NCBI GenBank assembly: GCA_907165135.1
Contig: OU015568.1
Coordinates: forward strand, 4,712,001 to 4,776,000
From: Oikopleura dioica
Lineage: Eukaryota; Animalia; Chordata
Direction of reading: 5' to 3'
Length of the DNA: 64,000 nt
The notes under the pieces are model-generated. The model did not search any database. It worked only from the letters and a program-made list of their open reading frames with translations, and was not told the origin of the DNA. This document shows positions 2,641 through 47,554 of this stretch, piece after piece. Positions within the stretch are counted from its first letter, which is position 1; each line of letters opens with the position of its first letter. The position numbers were made by a program, and so were the translations under genes.

Positions 2641-4858
2641 ATGAGCTCCAGAGAAGAAGAAGCTGAAGAACACTCTTACTTAGAACACCTAGATGATCAA
2701 CTCGATGATACTGTATCTGACAGTGAAGAAGCCCAAGCCTGCTGTACCCAAGCACCAAAGAGAGAACGAAGGGCGCATCAGATTTCGGAGAGCAAGACCG
2801 TCCGGGTCAATGAACCGAGCGTCATTTCCAGGGTCACCAACAATGTATTCGCTTTTCGAGATGATTCAAGGGAAGACCAGCGGCTCTGTAAGGTAAGATC
2901 GCTCTATTACAGTTCTCCCTTTCGTTTCTCTTAAAATTTAAGAAGTTCAGACAATGAACTCAAGCGAGAGTTCAACCCTCTTTTTTGTGTAAAGTTTACA
3001 CTGTAAACAAAACTCTTCTAAAAGGACATTTTTGATGCCTTGGAAATTCAATGAAAATAGAAATAAGGGATTCTTGGGTCATTTGGGATTTCGCATTTTC
3101 GAAATAGTTCTAAATTAGAATTTCGACATAGAAGCGAGAATTACGCAAAACGGGCGGACCGAGCCGCGGGCCATGGGAGAGGCCTTGTTTTGCAACGACC
3201 GTTCAAACTATTTCGAAATTTTTTGATTACTGTTTGTTCTTTATACAGATTTAGTGGCAAGAATCAATGATCAAATCCACCAGGGGGGTTAACAAATCAA
3301 TTAACTAAAGGCTGCTAAAATGCATAAAATTTTAACATTGATTTTTTACAAAAAAAAAAAGAATAAGACAGTAATACCCTTAACAAAAAATCAAGTGTAT
3401 CTCTTTCGTTATCTCAGATAACTTATCTGCCAATTTGAATAAGCTTTGAACCTTCTTATTATAAAATGAATTTTTATAAAGATTTTCTTTCAAAATTATC
3501 GCCGGTCTGACCCTTATTTTTCAGGTCCACTACGGCGAACTAGACGAGGACTTCCGGGAGGAGCTATCCATCATCAACCGCCTTAAACACCCCTGCTTGA
3601 CCCCGATCGAGGAGCTTCGCCATAAACCGGAAGTCGGCTCTGTAATCATCTACAAAAAGAGCTCTGGCAATCTTCGAGGTAACAATTTAATCGACACCTC
3701 CGCGGTTTGGTTTTATCAAACGCGGTTGGCTTCAAACTTGGCCTGATCAAGTTTGAAAATCGAGTTCATTTTCAAATTCAGATTTCATCGAGCAGAACGG
3801 ACCGATGAGCGAAAAAGTCGCTTCGAAAATGTTTCGCAAAATCGTGGATACAGTCGACTACTGCCATCAGAAGAATGTCGGGCTTGGGAACAACATCAGA
3901 CTATATCATATAGTTTACGATGATGGACACAGGTACGTTCAAAATATTCATAAAATGTCCTAAATATGCATTTTCCCACATAAGATATAATTTTATTTCT
4001 GAATAAAAATATGTTACGAAAAAGATATTTTCATTACAAAAGATGAATATTCAGCTTTCATAACATTTTTCAATCTTCATTCCCATAAACATTACCTAAT
4101 ATAACATCATCGAAATTATTTTGATACACAGAAATCGAAATTTGAACACAATATCTTTGAAATAGTACATCAATCGTTTCATAAATCAAATGAAATATTG
4201 TAAAAAACTCATAAAAAAGTCGGCAAAATAAGAAATGAAAGCAACAGGTATCGCTTGTTTTTTGGTTCTTATAGGTAATCCTAGTCTTTGATTGGTTAAA
4301 TTAAGTTAAACTGCCATCTGATTGGCTTAAAATCCCCATAACCCGCACTGACTCTGAGCTGCGGTACCCTATTGGCTGCTAGACTTGCCAACCTATCATT
4401 TTCTCTTTCCGAAAAGACATCAACTCGTAAAAGCTTTCAACAAACTTTTCAGCTCTCAAATCCGTTTTGACATGCTTGACTCCCCGATCGACACGAGCGA
4501 TTCTCCGGTCACCTCTCTTCGAAATTACTCGGTCTTCTACTGTGCTCCCGAGCTCATCTTCGACATCGAAAACGACTTCGACATCGTCAAAGCAGACCTC
4601 TGGTCGCTGGGAATTCTCCTCTTCAAGATGCTCACCGACAGCTACCCCTTCCACGACACAGACCTGAAAAAGCAATTCACGCGCATCTGCCACCAGCGAC
4701 TCCCTCTACCCGGCCATTTGTCGACCTCTGCGCTTTCCGTTCTCGCGAGTCTGCTACACAAGAATCCCGAGAAGAGAGCGACTCTCGAAGACCTCAAAAA
4801 CCATCCCTGGCTCAATTCGAATTCGGAAATTGATGAGCCCAAATCAGTGCTATTTTAG
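2641..4858 (+). CDS. Tribbles-like pseudokinase, 4 exons (approx. 2641-2890, 3525-3678, 3782-3932, 4450-4858)
   Basis: GT-AG exons join in frame. The C-lobe APELI...ADLWSLGILLFKMLTDSYPFHDTD...LLHKNPEKRATLEDLKNHPWL resembles TRIB proteins (YPFHD). No HRD or DFG motif. Confidence 0.65.
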
Positions 4859-4985
4859 ACTAGCACGAGCTTAAAAAAACGTTTCAACTTTTTTCTGACC
4901 TCGATTTTTTCAGCAATTTTTACCTATATTCATTCCTATTTACCTATATTATTTTATATTTATTCCAATAAAGCTATAAACCCTA

Positions 4986-5089
4986 GGCTCAGCAACCTGT
5001 GAGAAAAACCTGAGTCAGGGTCCCCTACGCGGCTTATTGAAAAGCCTTTTCGAGACCCTGACTCAGGTTTTTACACAGGATTTTGAGCC
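4986..5089. repeat. Family A fold-back element (TIR ..CCTGTG.GAAAACCTGAGTCAGGGTC)
   Basis: Imperfect TIR of about 36 bp at 4986-5022 and 5054-5089. The same TIR recurs at about 9 sites in the window. Confidence 0.8.
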
Positions 5090-5547
5090 AAGAAAAAAAA
5101 ACGAGGTAAGTTCTTGCCAAAAAAGCTTCTTTTTCCAAAAAGCTACTACTGTAAATAGACATCTTCAAACGACAAAAAAGGTCTTATCTACTGTAACTTT
5201 TACACTGAACCCTACAGTCTTTTTCCAGCTTTCAGTTCTAGTTGCCTTGTTTCTTAATTTTTTATCTTCTATTTTTTTAACAGCTTTCTGTTGAATCTGT
5301 AGCTGTATATTTTTCTTGAGCTGTTACTGTAAATATATGAATATAAAGAATACAAATATAGTTGCATCATTTCCTTTCCCACTCTTGGGAAATAGAATTG
5401 CGATTGATAATCAACGATTTACTATTTCGATCGGGTGGGAAATTGACTTGTTTTTGAGATTCGAAAATGATTGCTTCAGAAAAAGAGAGGGTTCATTTTT
5501 TATCACAAGGGTTTTTCGACTGTAACTCCTCGAATTAGACATAAATA

Positions 5548-5708
5548 CTTAAGGATACACACCTCGATAGAACCATTGTTTGATGCTATTTCTGATGATG
5601 CCAAAACCTGCGAGATTCTTAAGGGTGTCAACGAGATAGGACCGTTTTTTGATGCTCTTTCTGATGATGCCGAAACCTGCGAAAGTCTTAAGGGTGTCAA
5701 CGAGATAT
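5548..5708. repeat. Tandem repeat, about 69-70-bp unit, about 2.3 copies
   Basis: Unit CTTAAGGGTGTCAACGAGATAGGACCGTTTTTTGATGCTCTTTCTGATGATGCCGAAACCTGCGAAAGT repeated with divergence. It contains the family B TAAGGGTGTC motif. Confidence 0.75.
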
Positions 5709-6263
5709 AGCAAAGAAGGTTGCACCAATTTTTTGGCATCCAAACCATCCTTTTTTCGATTATTTTTTGGCATCATGCTGCTGCAAGTTTATTTTTTGAA
5801 AATCGAATAAGAGCAACTCAATAATTAAAGTATAAAAGATACAGATATGTAGCTAAAGACATTTGTTTGGATTTGAAACGGAGAATTGAAAGTTGAAAAT
5901 AGCGAGATTTTGAAAAAGAAAAATTATGAAGATCAGTTTTTTTGTTTGTTTTTTGTTGTTGTAAGTTGGATAGTAAGATACTTTGCTTGCTTTTCAGGTT
6001 AAGATAAATGATTAGGCATTTTGATGGATAGAAATAAATAAACACAGAAACACGCGAAAATGAATTGAAAAAGTTGAGAACAAAAAAAGGGTTGAATTCG
6101 TAATGATAGGAGTATGAATTTTTTACAGATGTAGTTTTTTTTTTGAAAATAAATAATAGTAGCTTCTTTTTTTGGCTTCGGACACAGTGCCGATTTTTTC
6201 GATTAGAAAATTTTATGAATTTTTTTATATATTTTGCGAGCGCGATGAATAGTTTAATTGATT

Positions 6264-9070
<2,807 letters not shown>

Positions 9071-43088: not shown

Positions 43089-46000
43089 ATGCCGTCTTCT
43101 GATCGACGAAGAGACGACCGTGATCGCGACCGAGACCGGGATCGAAGAAGGGATGACCGAGATAGGGATCGAGACAGAAAACGAGACACAAGAGACAGGG
43201 ATAGAGACAGAGATCGGAAAAGGAATGGTTAGATAAGCAAGCTTTTTTGTAGATTTAATGGGCTTTTTTTCAGAAAATTAGAGATCAGTATAGGTAAACC
43301 TTGTCCAAGACAAACGACCATTGGTAGACATACCCATACTGCCCACTGATATGCCCAGAAAAGGTTATAAAACCCCATGTTTTCATTACGAACTTCGTAA
43401 TACGAAGCATCTGCGATAGTACTGTTAGATGAAATTAAAAAACTTCACTTGAGGCAAATTTTCATAAAAAATTTTTTCGTGCTCAGAAGATAGAGCAGAA
43501 AATTCTGAGTCGAATAGGCTAGAATTGACCCGAAAATTTTTACTTTATGACGTCAAAAATTGCGTAATAAAGTCCAGATTAGGGCATTTTTGGTAAACTT
43601 TTGGGGAACTTTTAAGGGGGTTTCTGTTGGATTTATTCGACGTTCTATAGCTCAAAAGAATCGCCGTCGAAAACTGAGGGGGGGTTTCCAAGGGTTTTGA
43701 AAAAATTCAAGAAAAAAATTTTGACCATAATGCGACCGGTCGGTTTCAGCGTGTTTCGCTTGGAATTTCTCAAAATCCAAGAAAACCCCCCCTCAATTTT
43801 CGACGGCGATTCTTTTCAGCCCAAGAACGCCAAAAACTCCATCGGAAACCTCTTCAAAAGCTCCCCAAAAGTTTTTGGGGAAATGAGTCATAATGACGTC
43901 ATTTGACGGAATTATAGAGCCGGAAGTGGACCATTCGACTCAGAATTTCCTGCTCTTTCATATTAGCCAATAAAATTTTTTGAAAAATTTGCCTCAAGTC
44001 GACTTTTTAATTTCATCTTACTTTAATTCTAACCTGAAAAGGGAAAAGAGCCGCGACCGGGATCGAGACCGCGATCGAGATAAAAGAAGAGATGATCGCC
44101 GCAGAAGCCGTAGCCGCGATCGCAAAACTGAATCGTAAGAACAGCCCTTCTTTCTTTTTCTCTCAACACTTTCTAGCTCTTCCGCTCCTCCTGCCCAGCG
44201 TTCTCGATCGCGTTCGCCGCCAATGACTGCCGCTCGTCTCGCTGAACTGGCACGTGGCCCTGAAGGCGGTGGTGGAGGCTTTTTCGTACGCGGTGGAGTC
44301 CAACAATCGACGCTCAAAAAGTCCGATAATGTCGACGATCACGTCTTTATGCCTGGCGAGAAAGTCAACATTGCCTACGTCGAGGAGAAGCATGAAGAAG
44401 GCGACGATGATGCCGGAACTGCTCAGGATCGCGAACTTCGCGATGCTCAGCGTGCACAAGCAGGCGACGACTATCAGAAGAAGATGTATGACGCGGCGAC
44501 AAAGTTCTACGGAACTAAGGAGCGAATGGAATTGAAAATGACGGCGAATCGGTTGGGCATGCAATCTGGCTTCAAACCTGGCGGAGGAATCAGAGCTAAC
44601 GAAATCAAAGGCTTCCTGAACATTTGGTGCAACCAGCGACGACTCAAGCCAGAATACGAGTTCATCGAACGGGGAAAGCCGCCCAAAGGAACCTTTATTT
44701 GCAAGCTGAAAATTGAAAGCTTTGACTACATCTCTGAATGCGAAGCGAGGACGAAGAGAGAAGCTCAAGCCGATGCAGCCTGGGACTACGCACTCAAGCT
44801 GGTTTCAATGGGTTATTGTTCCAAAGCTGATCTGCCGAATAAGACCATGGCGACTGTTAATAATCAAGGCTGCGTCCCAACCGAGTGGAAAGCCGTTTTA
44901 ACCGACGACCATCTGGCTGCTGCTGGAAACTGGACGCCGGACAACTGTCGAAAGCGACTGTCAATGTTCTGTAACTTCGAAAAAATCTCATGCGAAATTC
45001 TCAACACTTCTGTCGGACCAGATCACGCGAAGATCGCCATTGCCGAGTTGAAATTGACGCTGCGAAAATATGGCAAGGAATTTTACGCGAAAGAGCAGGC
45101 GAGGACAAAGAAGCTGGCGAATTCGCTCGTTGCTTGGTCGATTATGAAGCAACTTTACGAAGCGGACATGATCGAGGCGTTCGGACAGAGACTGAAGAGA
45201 GCCTGTGAATCGAAATTTTTGCAGGCGGCTGAGGGAGGACCTGAAGCCGGCTATGCGATCGGAAACGACATCCAAGTAGACACGGGAATGAACGAAGACA
45301 CAGGCGATTGGACCCTGGACACCGCTCGTTCCCGCCTTCACGAGTACTTCGCCGCTCGAGGAATCGAAGTTGAATACGCCATGAAAGAAATCGGCTTCCC
45401 GCCAGATCGAGTTTACCAGGCGCTTTTGGTGTTCGAAATCGACGGTCTTCGATACCGCAGTTTCCATGAATGCGACAATAAAAAGATGACCCAGAAAAAG
45501 ACTGCCTTTGATTTGATCGTCCAGCTGTATCATGACAAGAAGATAGAGCCAAATCATGGACGACGAAACTGGGGAGACGGGCCAAACGGAAACATCCTTG
45601 GCCAATTCATGCCAGGAGCATTTATGCCGCCGCAAATGCTCGGACCGATGCATGGACCACGAGACAAGGACGAATTTCTAGTAAAAACGAAGCTCTCCCA
45701 AATCACTCCCAATCCCAACTTCGCCAACGTCGTCAATTCAACTCTACTGATGCTTGAGCGTTTCCTGAAAGAAGTGTCGGAGGAAATGATCGCCACAAAA
45801 CGAGAAGACGATCATTGGAAAGACAAGCCGGACGAAGAAGTGCGCGATTTGATGGGAGTAATGCGGGTCGGAGCTTTGAGCGCAAATACCGTTTTGACGA
45901 ATGAATCGGAATTCATGGTGATTATGATGATGCGAGACAAGCCAACGGCTGGAATGTTGTGCGAAATCGCAGCGAGACTCGATGAAAAAGTGCCGAAAGA

Positions 46001-47554
46001 TGAGGAGTTTCCGTTCACTGTCACGCCTAATATTTTGCGAGGAGGGATCGAAGTCACGAGGGATTGCGTGCCTTATCTGTCCATTATGATCAGCATTACG
46101 AGCGCGATGTGTAGGGAAGATGCTTATGATGATGCCAAAGAACTTTTGAAGGTAAATAATCTTAAAATATCATTAATATTTAATCTATCTTTCAGGTTCG
46201 GCCAGATACTCCTCCCGTCAAAGCAGAGCCACCAGGGGCAGAAACGAAGACAGAAGTCAAAGAAGAAGGAAACGGAGATATAAAAACTGAAGGAACAGAT
46301 GTTCCTGAAGCCGCTACGGCCGACGATAAAGCTCCCGCACAGCCAGAGAATCAGTCTGAAGCCCAAAAAGAGGCTCATGCAGAAGCTTCTTCCGAGGAAG
46401 CTCCTACTCAAGAAGCTCCTGTAGAAAGCGCCTCGGAAACGGTCGAAGAAAAGGCCGAAGAAGCATCAGCAGAACCTGAGAAAGAATTACCGCCATGCTA
46501 TAAAGACCTGCCCTTTACTCCTGCAGATGAACCCGCGCCAGAAAAGCCAGAAGAAGCTATAGTAAATGCCGAAGAAGTGAAGCAAGAACAAGTCGAAAAT
46601 GGGGCGACGGAAGAGGTGGAAAAGATGGAAGTAGATGGCGAAAAAGAGGAAGCAGCAGAAGGAGCTGCGGATTCAACTGCAGAAGATGGTGAAATACCGG
46701 ACTCGCCAACGCCGGATTCGAAGCCAGGATCGGCTAAAGGAAGTCGTCCACAAACTCCGACGCAAGATGAAAATACTGCTGTTGTGCCTGTGGAAATAAA
46801 AGAAGAGAAAAAGCCAGAGAAGAAAGGGCTTCATCACTGTAAGTTTCAACGGGGAAGCCCGACTTCATTTTATCAAAAATTTAGTAATGACGAACCCTGG
46901 CATGGAGAGATTAATCGACAAGGAGCATTGTTTAGCCGGCCTTGCCGAGCTGCGACGAGCGAAGTGGTTCCAAAGCTGTGCCTGCAATGTTCCAAGCTGC
47001 ATTCCAACGATTCGTCTCTTCAGAGACCTCTCTCAGGTACAAACTCAAGCCTTATCTTCTCCCTAACATTATAACCGACAGCGTGTTCAAACATGGGGCC
47101 TCCTTACCGACTGGCAATTGCATTTGCTTATTCAAAAGAGCTTGGAATCGTTCCAGCAGCCGATGCTTCCGTCCGACGCCGTCCGCCGCGTCTTTTGCGC
47201 AGTTTCGGGCGGAGTACTCCTCAAGGGTGGACTTGGAATACGCGACCCTTGCGAGCCAGGAAATGTCGATGCCTTTGAAAATTTGACCGAACAGGATCGC
47301 CACGATCTAACTGCCAGGTACACTCAACTTTGAACTCGGCCACCTGTGCGGAAACCTTAGTCAGAGCGCTAAAAGGGCCGATAGCCAAGCCGCGAAGCTC
47401 TTTCAGGACCCTGACTCAGGTTTCCGCACAGGTTGTCGAGCAAAGATTCAATCCCATCACACCTTTTCAACCCTTTTTTAGTGCCCAACATGCCCTCCGT
47501 CTTATCTGCTTCAATTATTTCTACAAAGTACTTGGTCTTCTTCCGCTGCAATGA
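43089..47554 (+). CDS. RD/RS-rich, three-dsRBD (DHX9-type), DZF-domain protein (ZFR/ILF3/STRBP family DZF)
   Basis: IKGFLNIWCNQRRLKPEY..EAQADAAWDY resembles DHX9 dsRBD1. GNWTPDNCRKRL..VGPDH..KKLANSLVAWSIMKQLY resembles DHX9 dsRBD2, and a third similar repeat starts GDWTLDTARSRL. DZF motifs: LMGVMRVG, DKPT, CLAGLAELRRAKWFQ, PSDAVRRVF, GIRDPCEP, SAQHALRL..KVLG. Confidence 0.88.
43428..44017. mobile_element. 590-bp fold-back (MITE-like) element in intron 1 of the dsRBD-DZF gene
   Basis: GATGAAATTAAAAA..CTTGAGGCAAATTTT..GAGCAG.AAATTCTGAGTCGAAT pairs with the right end. Inner arms AAACTTTTGGGGA.CTTTT and AAAAGAATCGCCGTCGAAAA also pair. TTA flanks both ends. Confidence 0.8.
47343..47432. repeat. 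Family A fold-back element in the last intron of the dsRBD-DZF gene
   Basis: CCTGTGCGGAAACCTTAGTCAG...CTGACTCAGGTTTCCGCACAGG. Confidence 0.8.

What the first reader, a model, noticed from the sequence alone, without database searches (positions are those of the whole stretch)
43089..47554. Novel architecture: DHX9-type dsRBDs fused to a ZFR/NF90 DZF domain with an RD/RS tail
Seen: one uninterrupted ORF (44223-46283) contains three dsRBDs followed by the first half of a DZF domain, so the fusion is not a gene-model artefact. Repeat 1 (about 44600-44830) matches DHX9 dsRBD1; repeats 2 and 3 (about 44920-45180 and 45300-45550) match DHX9 dsRBD2, including GNWT and VGPDH. The DZF is completed downstream after an acidic insert of more than 200 aa. 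Established: ZFR has zinc fingers before its DZF, NF90/ILF3 and STRBP have dsRBDs after it, and DHX9 associates with NF90/NF45 and with inverted-repeat dsRNA. Inference: a Rosetta-stone chimera in which the DHX9 N-terminus replaced the ZFR fingers. The exon of about 2 kb hints at a retroposed donor. The protein could help process the many fold-back introns of this genome.
Basis: partly seen in the sequence, partly recalled or inferred. Interest (0 to 1): 0.82.

Follow-up and report, generated by a model that had tools for sequence, protein, structure and literature searches.

The report
Tunicate dsRNA-binding protein: DHX9 dsRBDs plus DZF
This is a real, expressed Oikopleura dioica gene that joins three RNA-helicase-A-type double-stranded-RNA-binding domains to the NF90/ZFR-type dimerisation (DZF) domain; it belongs to a gene family named so far only from tunicates and not described in any paper I could search, and it looks like a tunicate counterpart of the vertebrate-only protein NF90.

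Summary
One 1,975-base exon encodes three dsRBD folds and the N-lobe of a DZF domain. A separate exon then adds a 214-aa acidic, disordered insert, and three more exons complete the DZF. The RD/RS region is N-terminal, not a tail.

The dsRBD pair has DHX9/MLE as its only relatives outside the family among 1.84 billion proteins. The DZF is of the NF90/ZFR (NF45-partner) type and lacks the catalytic residues.

The gene is not unique. O. dioica has at least five full paralogs, one divergent copy, a ZFR-like gene (dsRBD1 + one zinc finger + DZF) and two NF45 genes. It also has an ordinary DHX9 that keeps its own dsRBDs. The scan had flagged two of these paralogs before, on other DNA of this genome (s1-409187, s1-378113). 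Orthologs exist in Ciona, Phallusia and Styela as "uncharacterized" entries. Every named member is a tunicate.

The Styela ortholog shares two intron positions and phases with lamprey DHX9. The cassette therefore came by genomic exon shuffling, not retroposition.

The likely function is binding dsRNA as a heterodimer with NF45 during nuclear RNA processing. That is inferred, not tested. Verdict: new variant of a known kind, moderate interest.

The parts
43089..43226 (+). Exon 1: start codon and Arg/Asp-rich N-terminus (46 aa)
   Evidence: Sequence. The NCBI O. dioica ortholog P0001 begins with the same kind of RD-rich region. The join to exon 2 needs a non-canonical GG..AG intron and was not covered by RNA reads, so it is unverified.
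43227..44048 (+). Intron 1, mostly a 598-bp fold-back (MITE-like) repeat at 43424-44021
   Evidence: Nested inverted repeats span the element. The genome holds at least 14 near-full-length copies at 84-96% identity.
44049..44134 (+). Exon 2: RD/RS-rich segment
   Evidence: In frame with exons 1 and 3. The first 90 aa hold 37 R, 25 D and 11 S.
44177..46151 (+). Exon 3: linker, three dsRBDs and the DZF N-lobe in one exon
   Evidence: Open frame. tblastn of the ortholog P0002 covers 44223-46154 at 93% identity. Donor GT at 46152.
44598..44807 (+). dsRBD1 (DHX9/MLE dsRBD1 type)
   Evidence: Pfam dsrm E 5e-14. PDB DHX9 dsRBD1 1whq/3vyy, E 2e-10. AF2 fold, residues 9-78. 3vyy TM 0.90.
44937..45161 (+). 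dsRBD2 (DHX9/MLE dsRBD2 type, with GNWT and VGPDH); its N-terminal extension starts near 44904
   Evidence: PDB MLE 6i3r/5ztm E 3e-20 and DHX9 3vyx E 8e-16. AF2 residues 111/122-196. 3vyx TM 0.90, rmsd 1.8.
45315..45533 (+). dsRBD3 (a second dsRBD2-type domain; GDWT, NKK..QKK)
   Evidence: Internal repeat match to the dsRBD2 part of the query. AF2 residues 248-320, pLDDT about 90. Conserved across the family.
45657..46151 (+). DZF N-lobe (pseudo-nucleotidyltransferase half)
   Evidence: PDB ILF3 9gtz/4at7, E 1e-8. Pfam DZF_N 21.5 bits, below the 27.1 cut-off. AF2 of the 93% ortholog has pLDDT above 90, and its best match is NF90 chain B (E 7.5e-22).
46196..46838 (+). Exon 4: 214-aa acidic, Pro/Ala-rich insert between the two DZF lobes
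   Evidence: pI 4.2, with 46 E and 13 D. Predicted disordered, pLDDT below 50. RNA reads of a sister lineage end exactly at 46838 and continue into the exon-5 sequence.
46885..47036 (+). Exon 5: start of the DZF C-lobe
   Evidence: tblastn of P0002. Splice sites. HMM alignment fills 312 of 337 DZF columns.
47082..47317 (+). Exon 6: DZF C-lobe
   Evidence: Pfam DZF_C 27.7 bits, above the 24.3 cut-off. This is the best match in the whole genome to gar ZFR, at 43% identity and E 1.3e-23.
47318..47481 (+). Intron 6, holding a 106-nt hairpin repeat (47335-47440)
   Evidence: Inverted repeat with 44-nt arms, 82% complementary. It belongs to a dispersed short repeat family with dozens of matches.
47482..47554 (+). 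Exon 7: end of helix 9 (SAQHALRL..F interface motif) and stop codon
   Evidence: RNA reads of a sister lineage join the preceding exon sequence at 47481/47482.

Best explanation
The locus is an intact, transcribed Oikopleura dioica gene of about 1,100 codons.

Build of the protein:
- an Arg/Asp/Ser-rich N-terminus;
- three dsRNA-binding domains derived from the two-dsRBD cassette of RNA helicase A (DHX9/MLE), with the second domain duplicated;
- a C-terminal DZF domain of the NF90/ZFR type, which is a catalytically dead nucleotidyltransferase fold split by a disordered acidic insert.

Origin: it belongs to a family whose named members are all tunicates. The family was built by genomic exon shuffling of the 5' dsRBD exons of DHX9 onto a ZFR-type DZF gene. 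It expanded to at least five paralogs in larvaceans.

Likely mechanism (inferred): the DZF helix 9 pairs with one of the two NF45/ILF2 proteins of this genome. The three dsRBDs clamp A-form duplexes such as intronic inverted repeats. The RD/RS region takes the complex to the splicing machinery. The heterodimer would then act on splicing, back-splicing or editing of structured pre-mRNAs, as NF90-NF45 and ZFR-NF45 do in vertebrates.

Shown here: gene structure, folds, homology, family distribution, shared introns and loss of catalytic residues. Inferred only: RNA binding, NF45 pairing and nuclear role.
For: Gene and folds. Poly(A) RNA reads from a sister lineage confirm two splice junctions.

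dsRBD origin: of 206 significant hits in 1.84 billion proteins, those checked are family members, DHX9 helicases (dsRBD part only) or ZFR/ILF3-type proteins (DZF part only). Family and DHX9 split cleanly in the tree (100/99). Two introns of the Styela ortholog, inside dsRBD1 (phase 0) and dsRBD2 (phase 1), sit at the same codon and phase as in lamprey DHX9.

DZF type: it groups with ZFR/ILF3/STRBP and not with ILF2 (100/99). The model fits NF90 chain B (E 7.5e-22, TM 0.83-0.90) better than NF45 chain A (E 2e-12).

Interface: three of the four core NF90 helix-9 contact residues named in PMC3467086 (Gln319, Arg323, Phe327) are kept; Glu312 is His here. Both O. dioica NF45 genes keep the HxPFDF extension and the D..Q..R helix-9 motif.

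Catalytic residues are lost. RNA-contact motifs (GPxH, KK-x-A) are kept in dsRBD2/3.

Literature: NF90/SPNR are vertebrate-only. NF90 and DHX9 both bind intronic inverted repeats.
Against: No binding data of any kind exist. The NF45 complex could not be modelled. Glu312, one half of a salt bridge in the NF90-NF45 structure, is His in this protein, though it is Glu in most paralogs. Pfam DZF_N is below its cut-off on this copy. In the dsRBD tree the family lies outside all DHX9, including protostome ones, which taken literally argues for an older origin than the tunicate stem. DZF monophyly of the three-dsRBD family alone is rejected (p 0.0085, a post hoc test). The N-terminal RD/RS exons rest on a non-canonical intron that reads did not cover.
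Confidence: 0.65

Rival explanations
1. The architecture is ancient (at least chordate or bilaterian). It was lost everywhere except tunicates, rather than invented in the tunicate stem.
For: In the dsRBD1-2 tree the family is separated from a DHX9 group that holds vertebrate and nematomorph sequences and O. dioica's own DHX9 (100/99). In the DZF tree rooted on ILF2 the ascidian members branch below ZFR+ILF3.
Against: No named non-tunicate protein with both domains appeared among the hits listed from 1.84 billion representatives. The AU test does not reject family + O. dioica DHX9 as one clade (p 0.48), nor all tunicate partner-type DZFs as one clade (p 0.094). Fast tunicate evolution explains the long branches.
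Confidence: 0.15
2. The protein works without NF45. It might be a helicase-less decoy that competes with DHX9 for dsRNA. Or it might be a fast-evolving antiviral or anti-transposon dsRNA sensor whose DZF is only a scaffold.
For: The family has at least five paralogs, long branches and lineage-specific inserts. Glu312 of the NF45 salt bridge is His in this copy. The dsRBD cassette is the one DHX9 uses to bind dsRNA.
Against: The other helix-9 contacts are conserved across the family, as in ZFR and STRBP. Two NF45 genes are retained with intact interface motifs. Published data show NF45 is unstable without a partner and that ZFR, NF90 and SPNR all use this interface. The catalytic residues needed for OAS/cGAS-like signalling are absent.
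Confidence: 0.2
3. The fusion is an artefact of assembly or of reading two neighbouring genes as one.
For: None beyond the general risk with unannotated sequence.
Against: dsRBDs and the DZF N-lobe share one stop-free exon. The same order recurs at six other loci of this genome. It also occurs in four ascidian species and in intron-free transcript contigs.
Confidence: 0.01

Closest known systems
NF90/ILF3 and SPNR/STRBP (vertebrate DZF + dsRBD proteins)
   Same: They combine a partner-type, catalytically dead DZF domain with multiple dsRBDs. The DZF model's best structural match is NF90, and the helix-9 NF45-contact motif is conserved. The expected role is the same: binding dsRNA as an NF45 heterodimer.
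   Different: The domain order is reversed, with the dsRBDs before the DZF. There are three dsRBDs, not two, and they are of DHX9 type rather than the NF90/ADAR-like type. There is an RD/RS N-terminus instead of a C-terminal RGG/GQSY region, and a 214-aa acidic insert inside the DZF. NF90/SPNR are reported only from vertebrates (PMC3467086). No such gene is in this genome.
ZFR / Zn72D (zinc-finger RNA-binding protein)
   Same: The RNA-binding module sits N-terminal to a C-terminal DZF. The DZF C-lobe of this gene is the best match in the genome to gar ZFR (43% identity). O. dioica's ZFR-like gene (L021) nests with the larvacean family members in the DZF tree (96/94).
   Different: No C2H2 finger is present. 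dsRNA recognition would be by dsRBDs instead of zf-met fingers.
DHX9 / RNA helicase A / Drosophila MLE
   Same: The dsRBD1-dsRBD2 cassette is homologous (E down to 3e-20; TM 0.90). In the Styela ortholog it shares two intron positions and phases with lamprey DHX9.
   Different: There is no helicase core, HA2, OB fold or RGG tail. dsRBD2 is duplicated. O. dioica has a separate, complete DHX9 (L023).
Database orthologs: Ciona intestinalis F7AFE0 ('RNA helicase'), C. savignyi H2Z307 ('DRBM domain-containing protein'), Phallusia A0A6F9DI36 and Styela XP_039252997 ('uncharacterized protein')
   Same: F7AFE0, Phallusia and Styela have the same domain order by Pfam; H2Z307 is a 364-aa entry covering only the dsRBD part. 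Identity to this gene over the dsRBDs is 28-36%.
   Different: The ascidian proteins have a Gln/Ser/Tyr-rich N-terminus with RGG, not RD/RS, and no large acidic insert. None carries a functional name, and I found no paper on them.

Membership tests
DZF-domain NF45-partner proteins (ZFR / ILF3 / STRBP class) | Complete DZF domain (N-lobe + C-lobe, nucleotidyltransferase fold) | tested here: met
   DZF_C scores 27.7 bits, above the 24.3 cut-off. DZF_N scores 21.5 bits, below the 27.1 cut-off. 312 of 337 profile columns are filled. The AF2 model of the 93% ortholog has both lobes at pLDDT above 90 and matches NF90 at E 7.5e-22, TM 0.83-0.90.
DZF-domain NF45-partner proteins (ZFR / ILF3 / STRBP class) | Partner-type rather than NF45-type DZF | tested here: met
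   It groups with ZFR/ILF3/STRBP against the two O. dioica ILF2 genes (100/99). Foldseek ranks NF90 chains ahead of NF45 chains by about 10 orders of magnitude in E-value.
DZF-domain NF45-partner proteins (ZFR / ILF3 / STRBP class) | Helix-9 residues that contact NF45 (NF90 Glu312, Gln319, Arg323, Phe327; PMC3467086) | tested here: inconclusive
   Gln, Arg and Phe are conserved; Glu312 is His in this copy. Glu is kept in P0003, P0006, P0008 and the ascidian orthologs; P0002 and P0020 also have His.
DZF-domain NF45-partner proteins (ZFR / ILF3 / STRBP class) | Physical heterodimer with NF45/ILF2 | not testable with these tools
   Both NF45 genes (L024, L025) are split by introns, so no unaltered sequence could be given to the complex predictor. 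Co-IP is needed.
DZF-domain NF45-partner proteins (ZFR / ILF3 / STRBP class) | Loss of the catalytic Ser and acidic triad (pseudo-transferase) | tested here: met
   Aligned to NF90: the G-S motif is G-A, the second acidic residue is Met, and the third position is Ile/Thr (with the residue definitions).
ZFR proper | C2H2 (zf-met) dsRNA-binding zinc fingers N-terminal to the DZF | tested here: not met
   No zf-met hit. No C2H2 pattern in the close ortholog P0002 or any other family member checked (the spliced window protein itself was not pattern-scanned), while the control ZFRs show three.
ILF3 / STRBP proper | Two dsRBDs C-terminal to the DZF | tested here: not met
   All three dsRBDs precede the DZF, and the protein ends 19 residues after the interface motif.
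DHX9 / MLE | N-terminal dsRBD1 + dsRBD2 cassette | tested here: met
   Shared introns in the ascidian ortholog.
DHX9 / MLE | DEAH helicase core with HA2 and OB domains | tested here: not met
   No helicase family hit on any exon. The genome's true DHX9 (L023) has them.

The most novel reading that the evidence does not exclude
Tunicates independently invented their own 'NF90'. A ZFR-type partner of NF45 acquired the dsRBD exons of DHX9 by exon shuffling. This parallels the separate vertebrate acquisition of C-terminal dsRBDs by NF90/SPNR. In Oikopleura the system expanded to five or more partners and two NF45s, giving a combinatorial set of dsRNA-binding heterodimers. These may be tuned to the abundant fold-back repeats in its tiny introns, and possibly to its unusual splicing.
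Probability: 0.35. Interest if true: 0.7.

Novelty: new variant of a known kind. Interest (0 to 1): 0.55.

Why it matters
DZF proteins (NF45 with NF90 or ZFR) control splicing fidelity, RNA editing, circular-RNA formation and tolerance of self dsRNA. It is an open question why vertebrates keep two NF45 partners that read dsRNA through unrelated modules.

A third solution exists in the sister group of vertebrates. It is built from the dsRBD cassette of DHX9, a helicase that targets the same kind of intronic inverted-repeat duplexes as NF90. This suggests repeated selection for 'dsRBD + DZF' proteins.

It also gives a natural Rosetta-stone link between DHX9-type RNA recognition and NF45 complexes. 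And it explains database entries wrongly named 'RNA helicase'.

Tried and rejected
1. Active dsRNA-triggered nucleotidyltransferase (OAS/cGAS-like): rejected. The Ser and two of the three acidic residues are missing.

2. Retroposed donor: rejected. The Styela ortholog has introns inside dsRBD1, dsRBD2 and dsRBD3, and two are shared with lamprey DHX9. The single large exon here fits later intron loss in O. dioica (my inference).

3. Gene-model artefact: rejected.

4. RNA support: the only raw RNA runs under the same species label are from a lineage whose reads are mostly under 95% alike. Only patches aligned. They confirm the junctions at 46838 and 47481/47482 but say nothing about exons 1-2 or expression level.

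5. Complex prediction with NF45: not run.

6. The word search with carp STRBP returned only fish STRBPs and no ILF2 or invertebrate references. The DZF tree was therefore rooted on exon pieces of the two O. dioica ILF2 genes.

7. The dsRBD1-only tree (86 columns) could not place the dsRBD1 of the ZFR-like genes.

8. The timing of the DHX9 split could not be settled (AU p 0.48).

9. Organism of the unnamed family members (ERR14799794, ERR6349562, JGI 3300018785): not obtainable.

10. An intron in Styela dsRBD3 lies next to, but not in the same phase as, a lamprey dsRBD2 intron. It was not counted as shared.
Full report
**What is there**

The window is Oikopleura dioica DNA. The best protein match is an NCBI O. 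dioica entry at 94% identity. The finding lies on the + strand of G000:C1.

Using the ortholog P0002 (93% identical) and the splice sites, I built a seven-exon model:

| Exon | Coordinates |
|---|---|
| 1 | 43089-43226 |
| 2 | 44049-44134 |
| 3 | 44177-46151 |
| 4 | 46196-46838 |
| 5 | 46885-47036 |
| 6 | 47082-47317 |
| 7 | 47482-47554 |

- The model gives 1,100 codons.
- All introns are GT..AG except intron 1, which would be GG..AG. Such non-canonical introns are common in this species (my own knowledge), but this one is unverified.
- The first 90 residues hold 37 Arg, 25 Asp and 11 Ser. The RD/RS part is therefore an N-terminal region, not a tail.

**The domains**

- The large exon carries an ORF without stops.
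- ORF residues 125-205 match dsRBD1 of DHX9 and MLE. Residues 228-329 match their dsRBD2, with E-values down to 3e-20. Residues 529-645 match the DZF of NF90/ILF3.
- An AlphaFold model built on a 14-sequence family alignment shows three alpha-beta-beta-beta-alpha domains with pLDDT of 80-90.
- Its best structural matches are the MLE dsRBD1/2-roX2 complex (E 8e-13) and human DHX9 dsRBD2 and dsRBD1 (TM 0.90 each).
- The third domain matches the dsRBD2 half of the query and has the same N-terminal G-[ND]-W-T extension. It is therefore a duplicate of dsRBD2.
- Exon 4 encodes a 214-residue insert of pI 4.2. It sits exactly between the two DZF lobes and is predicted to be disordered. In the model of the 93% ortholog the two lobes have pLDDT above 90.
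- That model matches NF90 in the NF90-NF45 crystal structures (E 7.5e-22, TM 0.83-0.90). It matches NF45 less well (E 2e-12).
- Aligned to NF90, the nucleotide-binding Ser is Ala, the second acidic residue is Met, and the third position is not acidic. Like other DZF domains, this is a pseudo-enzyme.

**Expression**

The only raw RNA runs under the species label come from a divergent lineage; most laid reads are under 95% alike and none reaches 99%. They still show poly(A) RNA over the conserved exons. Reads stop at 46838 and continue with the ortholog's exon-5 sequence. Other reads carry the ortholog's exon-6 end joined at 47481/47482. Exons 1-2 were not covered.

**It is a family, not a one-off**

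In this genome the DHX9-type dsRBD pair recurs at several other loci, followed on the same strand by DZF pieces in the right order:

| Locus | Content |
|---|---|
| L017 (56% identical over the dsRBDs), L018, L019, L020 | Three dsRBDs + DZF |
| L022 | Divergent copy |
| L021 | One dsRBD1-type domain and one zinc finger (44% identical to finger 3 of gar ZFR) in a single 408-codon ORF, then a DZF |
| L023 | An ordinary DHX9: both dsRBDs, helicase core, HA2, OB and an RGG tail |
| L024, L025 | Two NF45/ILF2 genes, each with the HxPFDF N-terminal extension and the D..Q..R helix-9 motif |

- No DZF-then-dsRBD (ILF3/STRBP) gene was found.
- Two earlier first-reader notes of this scan (s1-409187 at the L019 locus, and s1-378113) flagged paralogs independently.

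**Distribution**

A full HMMER scan of 1.84 billion representative proteins gave only 206 significant hits.

- Every listed hit that carries both the dsRBD cassette and a DZF is one of two kinds.
  - Some are named tunicate proteins: Phallusia mammillata, Styela clava and Ciona intestinalis, plus O. dioica itself. A Ciona savignyi entry (H2Z307) covers only the dsRBD part.
  - The rest are unnamed marine transcripts. Many are 45-93% identical to one of the O. dioica paralogs.
- The other hits checked are DHX9 helicases (dsRBD part only) or ZFR, ZFR2, STRBP and ILF3 (DZF part only).
- The database names are 'uncharacterized protein', 'DRBM domain-containing protein' and, wrongly, 'RNA helicase'.
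- Three full-text searches found no paper on this architecture.
- The structural paper on NF90-NF45 states that NF90 and SPNR occur only in vertebrates. It also states that Ciona has NF45 and a Zfr-like protein with one annotated finger.

**Origin**

- In a tree of the dsRBD1-2 cassette, the family and DHX9 (including O. dioica's own) are separated by a 100/99 branch. Larvacean paralogs form their own groups and the ascidian sequences lie near the base.
- The root is unknown. An AU test does not reject the family being sister to the tunicate DHX9 (p 0.48).
- In the DZF tree rooted on the two ILF2 genes, the family, ZFR and ILF3/STRBP form one clade (100/99). ILF3/STRBP fall in an unresolved polytomy with the ZFR sequences. 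The O. dioica ZFR-like gene groups with the larvacean family members (96/94).
- Holding the three-dsRBD family alone together is rejected (p 0.0085, a post hoc grouping). Holding all tunicate partner-type DZFs together is not rejected (p 0.094).
- The simplest reading is that a tunicate ZFR-type gene acquired DHX9 dsRBDs, and that its descendants lost some or all fingers. L021 would be a surviving intermediate. Long-branch effects among fast-evolving larvacean sequences remain a caveat.

**How the cassette moved**

The Styela ortholog spans about 20 kb with many introns.

| Domain | Styela ortholog | Lamprey DHX9 |
|---|---|---|
| dsRBD1 | phase 0, ..KFVCT / LKISG.. | phase 0, ..TFTCE / VRVEG.. 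|
| dsRBD2 | phase 1, in the codon before FTAKERGSNKK | phase 1, in the codon before IFAREHGSNKK |

- These two introns fall at the same aligned codon and phase in both genes.
- Two exact coincidences among a handful of introns are very unlikely by chance (my estimate).
- The cassette was therefore copied as genomic DNA with its introns, not retroposed.
- The 2-kb exon in O. dioica then most simply reflects later intron loss in that lineage (my inference).

**Likely mechanism**

The following steps are inferred.

1. The dsRBDs keep the GPxH loop and KK-x-A helix motifs and should bind A-form duplex.
2. Helix 9 of the DZF keeps the Gln, Arg and Phe that contact NF45 in the crystal structure. 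The Glu of one salt bridge is His in this copy but Glu in most relatives. Pairing with NF45a or NF45b is therefore likely.
3. The RD/RS region resembles the targeting regions of splicing-associated proteins (my own knowledge).
4. NF90/NF110 stabilise, and DHX9 unwinds, intronic inverted-repeat duplexes in human cells. ZFR-NF45 and NF90-NF45 regulate splicing.

The gene's own introns carry such repeats:
- a 598-bp fold-back element with at least 14 near-full copies in the genome;
- a 106-nt hairpin from a dispersed family.

A role on structured introns is plausible but untested.

**Verdict**

The chimera and the 'fingers replaced' idea hold. Uniqueness and retroposition do not.
- It is a new variant of a known kind: an NF45-partner DZF protein with a DHX9-derived, N-terminal triple-dsRBD module, named so far only from tunicates and without literature.
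- Interest is moderate.

Noticed in passing
window:43424-44021 (intron 1): A 598-bp fold-back (MITE-like) element makes up most of an unusually long intron. The genome holds at least 14 near-full-length copies at 84-96% identity, which suggests recent mobility.
   Followed up: partly
window:47335-47440 (intron 6): A 106-nt hairpin (44-nt arms, 82% complementary). It belongs to a short dispersed repeat family with dozens of matches, many of them to one arm only.
   Followed up: partly
window:43227-44048: Joining exon 1 to exon 2 in frame needs a GG..AG intron; no GT..AG pair keeps the frame. RNA reads did not cover it.
   Followed up: partly
L024 (G000:C2:11331500-11340500) and L025 (G000:C4:3007500-3016500): O. 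dioica has two diverged NF45/ILF2 genes. Both keep the HxPFDF N-terminal extension and the helix-9 D..Q..R motif. The duplication of the shared partner parallels the expansion of its candidate partners.
   Followed up: partly
L021 (G000:C2:9341500-9350500, minus strand, about 4316-6808): ZFR-like gene with a DHX9-type dsRBD1, a single zinc finger matching ZFR finger 3, and a DZF. It is a possible intermediate between ZFR and the three-dsRBD family.
   Followed up: partly
Protein P0025 (UniRef F7AFE0, Ciona intestinalis): It is named 'RNA helicase' in UniRef, although Pfam finds only dsRBD and DZF domains and no helicase. This looks like an annotation transferred from the DHX9 dsRBDs.
   Followed up: yes
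RNA runs X4-X6 laid on window:43000-47600: No laid read from these runs, filed under the same species label, is 99% alike; most are under 95%, and reads align only in conserved patches. This fits the deeply diverged cryptic lineages of O. dioica.
   Followed up: no
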